Positions 5,990 to 10,554 of a DNA stretch of 64,000 bases are shown piece by piece. The stretch is from the NCBI RefSeq assembly GCF_000143415.4, contig NW_003314298.1, positions 1,641,931 to 1,705,930 of the forward strand, in the 5' to 3' direction. The position numbers were made by a program, and so were the translations under genes. The first letter of the stretch is position 1. Each line of letters opens with the position of its first letter. Under the pieces are notes generated by a model that searched no databases, was not told the origin of the DNA, and saw nothing but the letters and a program-made list of their open reading frames with translations. Source of the DNA: Selaginella moellendorffii (taxonomy: Eukaryota > Plantae > Lycopodiophyta).

Positions 5990-6831
5990 ATGGGCAGAGA
6001 CCGTGGCAAAAATTGCGCCCAAAGAAAGGAGATTGAGCATGCACTTACTGAGACGAAGTTGCAAAAACAACGACGAGATGAGGAATTATCGAAAATCGCT
6101 CATATCATTCTTGTTGTTCTAAGGTAATGACGACGCAAATTTGTTCAGAGGGCCTCTTTTCATAATGTTCCTTCTTGTAGAGACTATGAGCGTCCTAGAC
6201 AGTTTGAGTATTCGAAACAAGCTTATGCCTTGAAAGCAATATGGAATTATCTTTCCGATGATTGTGAGATCAGCCAGGAAATACAGGACGGTTTGTTCCT
6301 CCTATTCCAGAAGCTGCGTTTCCCCGAAGGCCAACAGAAGATCGACATGGAATTGGATAAGAAATCTCTGAAAGTAGCAACATCTGAGGCTTCAGCAAAG
6401 GTGATGCCATTTTCTTGGGACCAAAGCTCACATTATTATGCAGGTCTTCTGTAACATCCTTATGGATGGGTGGAGCTTATTCAGGCAAAAATTCGAGCAC
6501 AAGCCTCTAGTGGTCTACCAAGCTGGAAAAAAGGTCCTGAACACATGGACTAATCTGGAATTCACCAAGGGAATCCAGGCTATGAAACAGGATCTTCTGT
6601 GGAAGGTGTATTTGAGTATATGGTATCTACGTGTCATGTATGATTTAATCATTTATTTACTTGCAGAGAATTGTAGAACACGTAGAAAGCTCACGAGCAG
6701 CTGCTTCAAACAATGATCCAGGGGCTAATCTGTGTCTTCCTTTTGATGATCAGAGTCTTAGATGTTGTATTTCGGGGAGAAGAAAGCTTAACATCTTAAT
6801 GACAGTCACTGGGCTGTTCTATGACAGGTAG
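5990..6831 (+). CDS. Hypothetical spliced protein (~225 aa), no recognised family
   Basis: ATG 5990 after a telo-box. Plausible GT-AG introns 6124-6180, 6401-6443 and 6606-6666 keep the frame open to TAG 6829-6831. The 3' exon structure is uncertain. Confidence 0.42.
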
Positions 6832-7025
6832 AAAGCTGATAGCTTTTGTAATTTCAACTTCCTAACACAAGCAATGTCTCGCAGTATAGGTTGGAGGTAA
6901 ACCATCAGCAGCAAATTATCTTTGCATTTGAACCTTATGATAATCAAGCTCACAAACAATATTTACTTAGTGTTTCAATTTATAGATTATAAACAGCTAA
7001 TGATCTTAAACATGCAAACATTTAA

Positions 7026-8624
7026 TCAAGAACATTCCTCCTCACAGATTCTTTCACGCTCGATCATATTGCTTGATGGCTTTAGAATTACGTGACGCAT
7101 GAGCGGACGATTAGTGAGTGATAAGTAGGGTAGGTCCTGTAAGTCAACAGGTAATTTATCGACTACAAGGCGCACACAAGCCTCACCTTGTCCGAGATGC
7201 TCATGGAAGCCATTTTATGACTTGCAAGCATTTCTTTCACCAAACATACGAGCCGTTCTTTTACTGCACCTGTATACATTTTCCCACCGCCATAATCCTG
7301 CAACCAAATTGGTTACTTGTGTGTGGCATCAAACATGGAAGCTCTTACCCCTTTGATATTTGCCCACTCGCTATCGCTCTCCAGGAAGTAACTCAGATAC
7401 TTGTAAGAAACATCAACCTGGAACAGAAAAGCTTGCAGCCGAGTCCAAAAGTTCAATCACAATCACCTCCAAATTGGCCCCATGTTTCTCATGCTCCTCT
7501 TTCGTGCTCCCTCCGCCACTAAAGGCATGCTTGCGTATCTATGAGGAAGACGGACAACTATCAACCTTGACAGGAGCAAGAGAAATACCTTCATTTCAAT
7601 CATAGGTGGATCGTCCGACAGAAACAACAATTGGCAGTTGCTGTTGAAAGTCTGCGCATTGCCTAGTTCGCCCTGCCACATTACTTATATGAGAACAGAT
7701 TGCCAAACTTTTTGTTTCACCTGTAGCATCGGGAGAGGTTTGAGTTGGACAACCGCTGGCTCTGGTAAATTAGCACGTTCAAAAGCAGCTTTGGGAAATC
7801 TATCCTGCAGAATTCAGGTTTTAAATCAAGGCACTCGAACGTCCGTCCGTAGCTTACTACCTGGCCAATTCTGAGACACTTCGTAAATGTCTCGCCGAGC
7901 AGAGTCTGGGGAAGGCGACAGAAAACGGCCTGCCGGAAATTTTCGTCAAGAGCCAAAAAGAATCACGAAAGAGAGAACCTCAACAAGTTCCTGCTGAAGA
8001 GCTGCCAGGTCCGTCTTCGCTCCACGTACAGCCTGAATATTTTTTCCATACAAAGCTTAGAAGTCCCCTTTCAAAGCCAGTATACCTCATTTATCAGCAT
8101 GTACTTTGAAACATCGACAACACTCCTGTAGATTCTGAGAGGGTAAAGATATGAGAGGGTAAAGTTCAGCTGACAAAAGCACTGTTTTTACCTGCTTGAA
8201 ATGGAGCGAGGAGTGAGAATTAAAGTGCGCGACTTGTCCAAGCCGCAGGCCAAAACACTCCTGGCCTGTGCATCAAAACACGCCTTTCTCTTGGCTGGAG
8301 TGATACCAAGCTTTGAATCCGTGCAGGAAAGGATAATGACAACAGGTGCCGCAGTAGCGGTTTGCACATCCCTAGGCAAGGAAAACATAAACAGTTTGCA
8401 AGAAATCCTGGGATGTGCTTACTTTACAAACTGAAGAGAAGCCAAATGACGCAGATCTAATTGTTCCGACACATCAAAGGTCCCCGCAAACAGATAAAAT
8501 CTCTCCTTTCCTTCCAAGAGCTCCGCCAACACACTGCAACACAAGGATGAGCGCCGGAACACAGCCGGCTGCATACAAACCTGCTGTTTTCCAGGAGACC
8601 ACGAGTGAGATACCGTGCCGCCAT
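7026..8624 (-). CDS. Cytosolic tryptophanyl-tRNA synthetase-like protein with degenerate catalytic motifs (pseudoenzyme)
   Basis: About 12 short exons reconstructed: MAARYLTRGLL..|FYLFAGTFDVSEQLDLRH..|APVVIIL..ARSVLACGLDKSRTLI|...|GELGNAQTF..|IRKHAFSGGGSTKEEHEKHGANLE|VDVSYKYLSYFLESDSE|DYGGGKMYTGAVKERL. These match eukaryotic TrpRS in order. Confidence 0.8.
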
Positions 8625-8640
8625 GCCTCAAAAACCCTAC

Positions 8641-8690
8641 TAAAGCCCTTAAATAAATGTTTGAATGCCCAGTTTCCTTTAAGGGCTTTA
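8641..8690. repeat. Perfect 13-bp inverted repeat in the divergent promoter between TrpRS-like and NCS1
   Basis: TAAAGCCCTTAAA (8641-8653) and TTTAAGGGCTTTA (8678-8690). Confidence 0.7.
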
Positions 8691-8798
8691 AGGGATTCTT
8701 GATGGGGAATTATTCCATGGAATGGCATGTAAAGTGGCAAAACTCATTGAGACTTTTTTTATTTTGGTTCACTGAAAATCGTGGACGCCACGACCTCC

Positions 8799-10554
8799 AT
8801 GAATGCAGCTTCAAGGATACTTGGAGCTATTGCGCCTCTAGCAGCGGCGCCATTCAGCTCCTCGCGGCAACAAGGTACTACACATTTCCGAAGATCCCAC
8901 ACCATGGAGCTGCATGAGGAGCGCGAGCTCCATCGCAATCTCCTCCGCATGCCACACAGGCCTGCATTCACAGCATCGCACTGCTTCTTGGAGCCGATCT
9001 GTGCCACTCTTCCCTCAAATCCAGATCCCTCGCTCGCAAGCCAGGACTTGGCGCCAGTGTGCAAAGAGGGAAGGCTCTTATCTTCATGGGATATGACATT
9101 CTTGTGGCTGGGCTTGGTCGTGGGAGTTCCAAATTACTATCTCGCTGGAAGCTTGGTGGAGCTCGGGATGGCTTGGTGGCAAGGAATTGGCACAGTCTTG
9201 CTTGCGAATGTGATCACGTACTGCATTCTCGTCTTAGCTGCGCATCCAGGGACCAAGTATGGGATTTCCTTCCCGGTTTTGTTGCGAGCTTCTTTCGGAG
9301 TGTTTGGAGCCAACGTCCCGGCTTTGCTGCGAGGCTTTGTGGCTTGCGGGTGGTACGGGATTGAGACTTGGATAGGTGGTGAGGCGATTTTCAGGATTGT
9401 GGACGTGATGTTGGGGAAGAACAGGTTCTCCAACTTGGCCGAGAGCTTGCCTTTGCTTGGGACTTCTGTTCCCGAGCTTGGGTGTTTTCTCCTCTTTTGG
9501 CTGCTGCAGCTGTGGATCGTGTGGAATGGGATCGAGAGCATTAAGAAGCTGGAGAAGTATAGCGCTCCGGTGCTTATCGTGCTCACGGTGGCCTTGCTTG
9601 TTTGGGCCGTCGTCGCTGCTGGGGGATTTGGAGCAATGCTTGCTGCTTCTTCGGCATTTGGACGTGGTGGTCGCAAGGAAGGCAAGTTCTGGCAAGTTTT
9701 CTTGCCTTCGCTTACAGCAAACATTGGAACGTGGTCGACTTTGAGCTTGAATATCCCAGGTATGGTTCCACCTTTCTTTTCTTTCTCCTCGCATGGTTGC
9801 ATCTCATTTCTTTTTTCTTCTTGCAGATTTTAGCCGGTACACTTATTCGCAGGCTGATCAAATCCTTGGCCAGGCAAGCCTGCCTCTTTTCATGGCCGCC
9901 TTCTCTTTCGTCGGCCTGGCAGTGACATCGGCTTCGGAAGTCATATTCGGACACGCCATATCCAACCCCATCGAGCTCCTTTCACGGATACGAGGTGGCT
10001 TTCTCGTTGCTGTGGTTTCACTCATTGGACTCAGCCTGGCCACTCTCACCACCAACATCGCAGCCAACGTCGTGGCACCGGCAAACGCACTCGTCAACCT
10101 CGATCCAAAGCGCTTCACCTACAGAAGCAGCGGACTCGTTGTGGCAGTCATAAGCGTGTGCTTCCTTCCGTGGAAGCTCCTCCAGACCAGCGAAAGTTTC
10201 ATATACGCTTGGCTAGTCGGCTACTCGGCACTTCTCGGCCCAATCGGAGGTATACTTCTTGCTGATTACTACATTCTCAGGCAACGAAAGTTGGATATTG
10301 ACTCCCTCTATTCCTCGAGCAACACAGGAAAGTACTGGTACTCCAAAGGTGTGAATCCCGCGGCAATGGTTGCTCTTACGGCTGGAATTCTACCCTGCAT
10401 TCCAGGCTTCCTGAGCACCGTCGGCCTACTGAAGCTCAAGATTCCAAGGGTTTTGCTAGCTCTGTATGATGGTGCATGGTTTGTGGGGTTCTTCGTGGCT
10501 GGACTCGTATACTTGACGCTTTCGTGCTTTCCCCGAGTGGAGAGAGGCGTGTAA
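8799..10554 (+). CDS. NCS1: Nucleobase:cation symporter-1 (plastid purine/uracil permease), one intron ~9760-9826
   Basis: Transit-like N-terminus; [47 protein letters not shown]|[25 protein letters not shown]. Confidence 0.92.

What the first reader, a model, noticed from the sequence alone, without database searches (positions are those of the whole stretch)
7026..8624. TrpRS paralog with all catalytic signatures replaced but gene structure intact (pseudo-synthetase)
Seen after manual splicing, and invisible as one ORF: TGRGPS becomes AGTFDV, the HIGH equivalent HLGH becomes DLRH (~8447-8458), AIDQ becomes RIGQ, and KMSAS becomes NAQTF (~7646-7660). The N-terminal extension is missing. The C-terminal anticodon-binding domain is well kept (KHAFSGG, HGANLE, VDVSYKYLSYFLE, GKMYTGAVKERL). 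All exons are open with GT-AG junctions, which argues for selection rather than decay. Known: TrpRS is a homodimer with tRNA bound across subunits, and inactive TrpRS paralogs forming heterodimers are described in some protists. Inference: a tRNA-Trp-binding regulator or a dead heterodimer partner in a land plant.
Basis: partly seen in the sequence, partly recalled or inferred. Interest (0 to 1): 0.82.

Follow-up and report, generated by a model that had tools for sequence, protein, structure and literature searches.

The report
Dead tryptophanyl-tRNA synthetase copy in Selaginella
The spikemoss Selaginella moellendorffii expresses a correctly spliced extra copy of its tryptophan-tRNA charging enzyme whose catalytic site is destroyed but whose tRNA-anticodon-gripping domain is intact, so it probably still binds tRNA-Trp without being able to charge it.

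Summary
On the minus strand, 8624..7026, a 12-exon gene with 11 GT-AG introns of 47-57 nt encodes 345 aa. RNA contigs from four studies show all 11 junctions. The protein equals the public model SELMODRAFT_418391 of Selaginella moellendorffii, filed as a hypothetical protein.

It is a DNA-level duplicate of the land-plant cytosolic TrpRS gene. All 11 introns keep the positions and phases seen in Marchantia and Diphasiastrum. Exon 1 lost about 60 codons.

Against 117 canonical TrpRS, nearly all Trp, ATP and acceptor-arm residues are replaced or deleted, and Pfam PF00579 no longer matches. The C-terminal anticodon-binding domain keeps 14 of 15 invariant columns and all seven conserved CCA-anticodon contacts. 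The Rossmann domain keeps 25 of 75 (p=1.7e-5).

Neutral simulations never kept the frame open, and a rough allelic omega is about 0.3. The gene is therefore a maintained pseudo-synthetase, not a decaying pseudogene.

The function is inferred: tRNA-Trp anticodon binding, alone or as the anticodon-holding half of a dimer. No ortholog outside this species was found, but search sensitivity was limited. Entamoeba has a precedent, a TrpRS homolog that does not bind Trp.

I class it as a new member of a known kind, of moderate interest.

The parts
6970..8658 (-). Transcript of the TrpRS-like gene: about 34 nt 5' UTR, 1038 nt CDS in 12 exons, about 55 nt 3' UTR.
   Evidence: RNA contigs of 4 runs end at about 6970-6995 and 8645-8658 and are spliced at all 11 junctions.
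7026..8624 (-). Coding region from ATG 8624-8622 to TGA 7028-7026. It encodes 345 aa, identical to SELMODRAFT_418391 (P0004).
   Evidence: and the assert.
8628..8630 (-). In-frame TGA two codons upstream of the start codon. It rules out a longer N-terminus on this mRNA.
   Evidence: Sequence read.
8581..8624 (-). Exon 1, 14 codons plus 2 nt. It is the truncated remnant of a canonical first exon of 74-91 codons and ends at the conserved phase-2 intron.
   Evidence: No N-terminal remnant lies upstream.
8470..8487 (-). AGTFDV in place of TGRGPS. In human numbering the changes include R162T, G163F and S165V, which remove ATP phosphate contacts.
   Evidence: residue roles from PMC2275098.
8446..8457 (-). 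DLRH in place of the HIGH-type HxGH signature (H170D, G172R; H173 is kept).
7861..7872 (-). RIGQ in place of AIDQ (A310R, D312G). It is flanked by two 3-residue deletions that remove LIP/C and PYF, including Y316.
7646..7660 (-). NAQTF in place of KMSAS (K349N, M350A, S351Q, A352T, S353F).
7196..7615 (-). C-terminal helical anticodon-binding domain, residues about 217-306 (exons 8-11 with introns 8-10). It has no indels. F231, S232, G234, H241, T281, G282 and K285 correspond to human F377, S378, G380, H387, T427, G428 and K431.
   Evidence: contact residues from PMC1538984. AF2 pLDDT is about 97 here.
7026..7136 (-). Exon 12. It keeps the RPL remnant of the canonical C-terminus and adds a lineage-specific tail of about 25 residues that is predicted to be disordered.

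Best explanation
This is an expressed pseudo-synthetase. It arose as a genomic duplicate of the cytosolic tryptophanyl-tRNA synthetase gene in the Selaginella lineage. It has lost the N-terminal domain, the Trp pocket, the ATP site (HIGH, AIDQ, KMSAS) and the acceptor-arm contacts. It has kept a folded Rossmann scaffold and an essentially canonical anticodon-binding helical domain.

Shown: descent from the plant TrpRS gene, the exon model, transcription and splicing, loss of catalytic residues, retention of anticodon-contact residues, and constraint on the reading frame.

Inferred: the protein cannot form Trp-AMP or charge tRNA. It still recognises the CCA anticodon loop of tRNA-Trp. It therefore acts as a non-catalytic tRNA-Trp-binding protein, for example in sequestering, chaperoning or sensing, either on its own or within a dimer.
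For: Homology:
- phmmer gives E=1e-36 to human and bovine TrpRS.
- The AF2 model has pLDDT 82.9 and pTM 0.83. Its best Foldseek match is the human TrpRS-tRNA complex 2AKE, TM 0.74.

Descent:
- All 11 introns share position and phase with the canonical Marchantia and Diphasiastrum genes.

Expression:
- All junctions appear in RNA contigs from 4 studies, and 16 RNA runs hold the sequence.

Loss of catalysis:
- 19 catalytic-site positions that are 85-100% conserved in 117 canonical TrpRS are replaced or deleted.
- The residues that recognise discriminator base A73 (D99, K102) are absent.
- There is no Pfam PF00579 hit.

Domain-specific constraint:
- The anticodon domain keeps 14 of 15 invariant columns, against 25 of 75 in the Rossmann domain (Fisher p=1.7e-5).
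- Its identity to plant enzymes is 47-53%, close to the 49-61% of mammal or oomycete enzymes against plants. The Rossmann domain shows 28-30% against 66-71%.

Selection on the frame:
- 0 of 300 neutral simulations stayed stop-free.
- The two S. moellendorffii copies differ by 9 residues in 291 codons (dN about 0.015). The neighbouring gene's allelic contigs give dS of about 0.05, so omega is about 0.3.
Against: - No binding or activity data exist.
- No ortholog was found outside S. moellendorffii, so long-term conservation across species is not shown.
- The omega estimate borrows dS from the neighbouring gene. It also assumes that SELMODRAFT_411225 is the allelic copy.
- The 9 allelic replacements are not depleted in the anticodon domain (4 in about 90 residues against 5 in about 200).
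- Three variable anticodon contacts differ from human (D382S, I384K, L426Y), although these positions also vary among canonical enzymes.
- The AF2 model is driven by an alignment of canonical enzymes.
- Only the window's allele is seen in the RNA contigs.
Confidence: 0.6

Rival explanations
1. It is the anticodon-holding subunit of a heterodimer with the canonical TrpRS. [quoted passage not shown] A dimer of one canonical subunit and this paralog could therefore charge a tRNA whose anticodon is held by the paralog. That would be an unfused analogue of the Leishmania TyrRS pseudo-dimer, or alternatively a dominant-negative regulator.
For: Cross-subunit tRNA binding in hTrpRS (PMC1538984). Half-of-the-sites reactivity (PMC2275098). 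The L. major TyrRS pseudo-dimer has one active site and one anticodon site (PMC9978631). The paralog shows exactly the complementary pattern, a dead active site with an intact anticodon domain. Parts of the CP1 helices are recognisable (ACG.D, T.I., Y..VV.V.K...N).
Against: CP1, which forms the dimer interface, keeps only 6 of 20 invariant columns and carries a 10-residue deletion. No interaction data exist. The canonical S. moellendorffii TrpRS was not retrieved, so no complementary degeneration could be looked for. I found no published TrpRS heterodimer of this kind.
Confidence: 0.2
2. It is a functionless relic. The gene is a transcribed, still-open duplicate on its way to becoming a pseudogene, and its expression is a by-product of the bidirectional promoter shared with the NCS1-like neighbour.
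For: It is found only in S. moellendorffii. Its tree branch is extremely long. The two copies differ at about 3% of residues. The intergenic space to the divergent neighbour is only about 120 bp. The second copy's public model lacks exon 5 and the last exon.
Against: At 28-35% identity to its parent, the frame has no stop or frameshift, and every indel is in frame. All 22 splice dinucleotides are intact. No neutral simulation stayed open. Erosion is strongly domain-specific (p=1.7e-5). The rough omega is about 0.3; at dS 0.05 neutrality would give about 34 nonsynonymous changes, and 10 are observed. Splicing is efficient in all runs.
Confidence: 0.12
3. The Rossmann domain has taken on a new function. 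The remodelled pocket binds another small molecule or a protein partner, and the anticodon domain is kept only as a structural or docking module.
For: The Rossmann core strands and several pocket residues remain (G161, S166, H173, Q284, I311, Q313, D314). The model folds with pLDDT 72-94 in this domain. Human T2-TrpRS uses its open pocket for a non-translational interaction (PMC6103731).
Against: No ortholog set exists to show a new conserved pocket. The residues kept with the highest fidelity are exactly the anticodon contacts.
Confidence: 0.06
4. It is still an active, unusual TrpRS.
For: UniRef names it automatically as a tryptophanyl-tRNA synthetase. H173 and Q313 are retained.
Against: K349, S351, S353, R162, H170, D312, K200 and Q194 are replaced and Y316 is deleted. 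The N-terminal domain needed for Trp activation and A73 recognition is missing. There is no Pfam hit.
Confidence: 0.02

Closest known systems
Canonical eukaryotic cytosolic TrpRS (human WARS1; plant orthologs such as Marchantia P0073 and Diphasiastrum P0102)
   Same: The fold is the same (TM 0.74-0.77). The 12-exon gene structure is the same, with all 11 intron positions and phases. The C-terminal anticodon-binding domain is the same and keeps the conserved CCA contacts.
   Different: It lacks the N-terminal domain, starting at about human residue 127. HIGH, AIDQ and KMSAS, the Trp and ATP ligands and the acceptor-arm loop are replaced or deleted. Rossmann-domain identity is only 28-30%. There is no PF00579 hit. 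It carries a 25-residue disordered tail.
Divergent TrpRS homolog of Entamoeba histolytica (PDB 3HZR; Merritt et al. 2011, as summarised in PMC3940080)
   Same: It is a eukaryotic-type TrpRS paralog that coexists with canonical TrpRS. It is reported to lack Trp binding and to be unlikely to charge tRNA-Trp. It is a structural match to the model (TM 0.77).
   Different: Its origin is presumably independent, in an amoebozoan rather than a lycophyte, though I ran no joint tree. I could not read the primary paper, so I do not know which motifs or anticodon contacts it keeps. The Selaginella protein is also N-terminally truncated.
Double-length TyrRS pseudo-dimer of Leishmania major (Larson et al. 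2011, via PMC9978631 and PMC9437257)
   Same: It is a class Ic synthetase in which one half has lost the active site while an anticodon site is retained. The logic of cross-subunit tRNA binding makes such a half useful.
   Different: It is a TyrRS, not a TrpRS. The two halves are fused in one polypeptide, whereas here the gene is separate and no partner has been demonstrated.
Human T2-TrpRS and mini-TrpRS fragments
   Same: They are N-terminally shortened TrpRS forms with a non-translational role. T2, which lacks residues 1-93, acts through its open pocket (PMC6103731).
   Different: They are made by proteolysis or alternative splicing of the active enzyme and keep all catalytic motifs. The Selaginella protein is encoded by its own gene, starts still later, and has a destroyed active site.
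Other aaRS-derived pseudoenzymes (GCN2 HisRS-like domain, HisZ, SLIMP), cited from my own knowledge
   Same: They share the concept of synthetase descent, loss of aminoacylation, and retained ligand or tRNA binding used for regulation.
   Different: They come from different synthetase families, are widely conserved and have demonstrated functions. This one is so far restricted to one species and is untested.

Membership tests
Eukaryotic/archaeal-type TrpRS (class Ic aaRS, EC 6.1.1.2) | Homologous Rossmann-fold catalytic domain plus C-terminal helical domain | tested here: met
   phmmer E=1e-36 to human TrpRS. Foldseek TM 0.74-0.77 to TrpRS structures.
Eukaryotic/archaeal-type TrpRS (class Ic aaRS, EC 6.1.1.2) | HIGH-type signature (HxGH) and the TGRGPS loop | tested here: not met
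   DLRH and AGTFDV. H170, G172, R162, G163 and S165 are 100% conserved in 117 canonical enzymes and are all replaced.
Eukaryotic/archaeal-type TrpRS (class Ic aaRS, EC 6.1.1.2) | KMSKS-type signature (KMSAS) | tested here: not met
   NAQTF; K349N, S351Q, S353F.
Eukaryotic/archaeal-type TrpRS (class Ic aaRS, EC 6.1.1.2) | AIDQ motif and Trp-binding residues (Y159, Q194, E199, K200, Q284, Q313, Y316) | tested here: not met
   RIGQ (D312G); Y159F, Q194I, E199D, K200S, Y316 deleted. Only Q313 and Q284 are kept, and Q284 depends on the alignment.
Eukaryotic/archaeal-type TrpRS (class Ic aaRS, EC 6.1.1.2) | N-terminal fragment that recognises discriminator base A73 (D99, K102) and supports Trp activation | tested here: not met
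   It is absent. The ORF starts at about human residue 127, with an in-frame stop upstream.
Eukaryotic/archaeal-type TrpRS (class Ic aaRS, EC 6.1.1.2) | Anticodon (CCA) contact residues F377, S378, G380, H387, T427, G428, K431 | tested here: met
   All seven are identical (F231, S232, G234, H241, T281, G282, K285).
Eukaryotic/archaeal-type TrpRS (class Ic aaRS, EC 6.1.1.2) | Pfam PF00579 (tRNA-synt_1b) above the gathering score | tested here: not met
   No family matched even at E<=1. The canonical control P0005 scores 71.8 bits.
Eukaryotic/archaeal-type TrpRS (class Ic aaRS, EC 6.1.1.2) | Trp activation and tRNA-Trp aminoacylation activity | not testable with these tools
   This needs ATP-PPi exchange and charging assays.
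Land-plant cytosolic TrpRS gene lineage (by descent) | Shared exon-intron structure: 11 introns with phases 2,2,2,0,0,0,0,0,0,0,0 | tested here: met
   Nine introns fall in the identical alignment column. Two lie within 3-5 columns in gapped regions. All have the same phase as in Marchantia and Diphasiastrum.
Pseudo-synthetase (maintained non-catalytic aaRS paralog) | Catalytic residues lost while the ORF, splicing and expression are maintained | tested here: met
Pseudo-synthetase (maintained non-catalytic aaRS paralog) | Purifying selection on the retained part | tested here: inconclusive
   Domain-specific retention is strong (p=1.7e-5). The rough omega is about 0.3. No ortholog set or second-haplotype DNA was available for a proper dN/dS.
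Asymmetric class Ic dimer (Leishmania TyrRS pseudo-dimer type) | Physical pairing of a catalytic half with an anticodon-binding half | not testable with these tools
   The gene is not fused. The partner and dimerisation are unknown. CP1 is poorly conserved.
Unprocessed pseudogene | Disabling mutations, loss of splicing or expression, omega near 1 | tested here: not met
   There are no stops or frameshifts. All junctions are used in RNA. The rough omega is about 0.3.

The most novel reading that the evidence does not exclude
The paralog is the dedicated anticodon-holding subunit of a heterodimer with the canonical Selaginella TrpRS. One catalytic subunit and one tRNA-gripping subunit would be encoded by separate genes. 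This would be a naturally split, unfused version of the asymmetric class Ic dimer, able to tune or gate tRNA-Trp charging.
Probability: 0.18. Interest if true: 0.72.

Novelty: new member of a known kind. Interest (0 to 1): 0.5.

Why it matters
Catalytically dead synthetase paralogs are a recurring route to new tRNA-linked regulators. A 2022 review table lists none derived from TrpRS (PMC9437257). The only precedent I found is an uncharacterised Entamoeba homolog.

This gene is a clean natural dissection of TrpRS. The whole active site, the acceptor-arm contacts and the N-terminal domain have been eroded, while the anticodon-binding domain is kept at canonical quality in a gene that is transcribed and correctly spliced. 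That makes a specific hypothesis directly testable: a stand-alone tRNA-Trp anticodon reader, or the non-catalytic half of an asymmetric dimer.

It also corrects a database name. UniRef calls the protein a tryptophanyl-tRNA synthetase, which it almost certainly is not.

Its reach is limited because it has so far been seen in only one species.

Tried and rejected
- Single exons gave nothing in Pfam or PDB searches because they are too short and too diverged.
- The spliced protein has no reference and I did not type it. Instead an exhaustive search with the 59-aa exon 3 piece recovered the second copy, P0001. That led to P0004, the window's own protein.
- The maximum-likelihood tree of 42 sequences cannot place the paralog. 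Its branch is about 10 changes per column and attaches, unresolved, near the base of the green-lineage sequences. I rely on intron positions for descent instead.
- The canonical S. moellendorffii TrpRS was not recovered. It was not among the 120 listed hits of the profile search, and the region-restricted search produced only 34 candidates.
- DNA of the second copy (SELMODRAFT_411225) is not on record. dN/dS was therefore approximated from protein differences and the neighbour gene's allelic dS.
- No remnant of the lost N-terminal exon sequence lies upstream, and there is no second TrpRS copy anywhere in the window.
- The Merritt 2011 paper (PMC3066001) is not held.
- No list of dimer-interface residues was found in the papers I read.
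- Literature searches for this gene, or for TrpRS heterodimers with inactive paralogs, found nothing.

Full report
**What is there.**
Reading the minus strand of 6500-9300 and assembling the open segments gives a 12-exon gene from ATG 8624 to TGA 7026. The CDS is 1038 nt and encodes 345 aa. Its 11 introns are 47-57 nt, and all are GT-AG and frame-consistent. An in-frame TGA at 8630-8628 sits two codons before the ATG, so the short N-terminus is a property of the mRNA and not of the model.

**Expression.**
Sixteen RNA runs hold 15-43% of the sampled words of 6900-8900, as expected for a spliced message. Contigs of four runs from four studies were laid on 6300-9800. They show all 11 junctions exactly as modelled, with no differing letters, and cover about 6970-8658. 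No contig links to an upstream exon. The neighbouring plus-strand gene, an NCS1-type transporter by its translation, begins its transcript at about 8776. The two genes are therefore head to head, about 120 bp apart. Contig word depths are of the same order as the neighbour's: higher in two runs and lower in two.

**Identity.**
Single exons are too short for Pfam or PDB searches. An exhaustive search of 1.84 billion representatives with the 59-aa exon 3 found one real relative, P0001. A word-indexed search with P0001 then returned two Selaginella moellendorffii proteins:
- SELMODRAFT_411225 (P0001, 298 aa).
- SELMODRAFT_418391 (P0004, 345 aa).

P0004 is identical to my spliced model (and the assert). 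It lies on GL377602.1 of GCA_000143415.2. GenBank calls both proteins hypothetical, and UniRef names them automatically as tryptophanyl-tRNA synthetase. Neither matches any Pfam family, whereas a canonical control scores 71.8 bits on PF00579. Homology to eukaryotic cytosolic TrpRS is nevertheless secure:
- phmmer gives E=1e-36 to human and bovine TrpRS chains.
- An AlphaFold2 model has pLDDT 82.9 and pTM 0.83.
- Its best Foldseek matches are human, Plasmodium and yeast TrpRS at TM 0.72-0.77.

**Descent.**
I mapped the canonical TrpRS proteins of Marchantia (P0073 on L003) and the lycophyte Diphasiastrum (P0102 on L001 and L002) onto their genes. Both have 12 exons, with intron phases 2,2,2,0,0,0,0,0,0,0,0. 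The paralog has the same series. Nine introns fall in the identical alignment column, and the other two lie within 3-5 columns in gapped stretches. It is therefore a DNA-level duplicate of the embryophyte cytosolic TrpRS gene. It is not a retrocopy and not a transfer. Exon 1 has 14 codons instead of 74-91, so the N-terminal loss lies within the first exon. No remnant is detectable upstream. A tree cannot date the duplication, because the paralog's branch is about 10 changes per column and attaches without resolution near the green-lineage sequences.

**What was lost.**
I aligned the paralog with 117 canonical eukaryotic TrpRS and indexed the alignment on human numbering. The roles of the residues come from the human structures (PMC2275098; PMC1538984).
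- Replaced: Y159F, R162T, G163F, S165V, H170D, G172R, Q194I, D197C, D198T, E199D, K200S, A310R, D312G, K349N, M350A, S351Q, A352T, S353F.
- Deleted: Y316.
- These positions are 85-100% conserved in the canonical set, and nearly all are 96-100%.
- The helix that reads the discriminator base A73 (D99, K102) is absent.
- A 10-residue deletion removes the GIFGF..D.IGK loop region that touches the acceptor arm.
- Two 3-residue deletions flank the former AIDQ motif.

Trp activation and tRNA charging are therefore very unlikely.

**What was kept.**
The seven conserved anticodon contacts of human TrpRS are all identical in the paralog: F377, S378, G380, H387, T427, G428 and K431. K431 is the residue whose mutation costs about 290- to 790-fold in activity. 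The contacts that differ (R381G, D382S, I384K, L426Y) lie at positions that also vary among canonical enzymes, and R381 contacts the bases only through its main chain.

| Measure | C-terminal helical domain (human 363-452) | Rossmann domain |
|---|---|---|
| Columns at least 95% invariant in canonical enzymes, kept in paralog | 14 of 15 | 25 of 75 |
| Gap columns | 0 | 19 |
| Paralog identity to six plant enzymes | 47-53% | 28-30% |
| Mammal or oomycete canonical enzyme against the same plants | 49-61% | 66-71% |

The difference in retained invariant columns gives Fisher p=1.7e-5. The model's confidence is about 97 in the C-terminal domain and 72-94 in the Rossmann part. It falls below 50 in the tail, residues 310-345.

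**Selection or decay.**
Random substitutions that take a plant TrpRS CDS of 343 codons to 33% identity need about 560 hits. They leave 11.8 stops on average, never fewer than 3, and 0 of 300 runs stayed open. The real gene has no stop, only in-frame indels and 22 intact splice dinucleotides.

For the recent past, the two S. moellendorffii copies differ at 9 residues in 291 shared codons. That needs at least 10 nucleotide changes and gives dN of about 0.015. The allelic RNA contigs of the adjacent NCS1-like gene show 12 synonymous and 7 nonsynonymous differences, giving dS of about 0.05. If the same dS applies, omega is about 0.3.

This estimate is rough. dS is borrowed from the neighbour, the copy relationship is assumed, and the counts are small. 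The nine replacements are also not depleted in the anticodon domain, although four of them sit at positions that vary in canonical enzymes. None touches an anticodon contact.

**How it most likely works.**
Human TrpRS binds each tRNA across the dimer, with the acceptor arm in one subunit and the anticodon on the helical domain of the other. It also shows half-of-the-sites reactivity. A protein that keeps only the anticodon-reading module on a folded scaffold is therefore best read as a non-catalytic tRNA-Trp binder.

Whether it acts alone or inside a dimer is open. The pattern of a dead site with a live anticodon domain is the one seen in the non-catalytic half of the Leishmania TyrRS pseudo-dimer. 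However, the CP1 region that forms the TrpRS dimer interface is as eroded as the rest of the Rossmann fold: it keeps 6 of 20 invariant columns and has a 10-residue deletion. I therefore give the specific heterodimer model about 0.2.

**Distribution and novelty.**
No ortholog turned up outside S. moellendorffii. All other hits are canonical enzymes at 27-36% identity. The sensitivity of these searches was limited:
- The exhaustive search used only the most diverged exon.
- The indexed searches need shared 5-residue words.
- Only 120 of 621 profile hits were listed.

The ESM Atlas returns a Pfam-less cluster of 63 proteins, with a 443-aa representative, as the nearest neighbour by features (0.93) and as a fold match (TM 0.77). 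It has no taxa or ids, so I could not tell whether these are relatives.

In the literature I found no mention of the locus tags, no paper pairing Selaginella with TrpRS, and no TrpRS heterodimer with an inactive paralog. A divergent Entamoeba TrpRS homolog that lacks Trp binding is the nearest precedent. A 2022 review lists no TrpRS-derived aaRS-like protein.

**Verdict.**
This is a new, uncharacterised member of the known class of pseudo-synthetases. It is well supported as a real, maintained gene. Its function is inferred only.

Noticed in passing
window 8776-10554 (+): An NCS1-type nucleobase transporter gene with a long N-terminal presequence lies head to head with the TrpRS-like gene, with about 120 bp between the transcript ends. 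RNA contigs show two allelic forms of it, with 12 synonymous and 7 nonsynonymous differences in about 980 nt. Only one form of the TrpRS-like transcript was seen in the same runs.
   Followed up: partly
P0001 (SELMODRAFT_411225), not in the window: The public model of the second S. moellendorffii copy lacks exon 5 and reads through the last intron, ending VRLVCAL. Whether this reflects gene prediction or real splice-site changes could not be checked, because its DNA is not on record.
   Followed up: partly
ESM Atlas: A cluster of 63 'hypothetical proteins' (443-aa representative, no Pfam family, taxa not recorded) is the nearest neighbour of the paralog by language-model features (0.93, 168 of 256). 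It also shares the TrpRS fold (TM 0.77). It may be another set of degenerate TrpRS-like proteins.
   Followed up: no
L001 and L002 (Diphasiastrum complanatum CM055105.1, 12.55 and 12.78 Mb): Two loci about 195 kb apart encode the identical 402-aa canonical TrpRS. They have the same 11 introns but different intron lengths, for example 15150 against 2910 nt. This looks like a recent segmental duplication.
   Followed up: no
P0009, P0010, P0075: Some public TrpRS models are unusually long: Oxalis oulophora at 786 aa (999 bits, possibly a doubled TrpRS), a JGI protein fused to spermine-synthase-type domains (713 aa), and Closterium fused to malate/lactate dehydrogenase domains (756 aa). These may be annotation fusions.
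   Followed up: no
P0002, P0003: The 59-aa exon 3 piece also matched two very long proteins (2741 and 1684 aa) through 38 and 12 repeated stretches at 34% identity. This is probably a repeat or compositional match unrelated to TrpRS.
   Followed up: no
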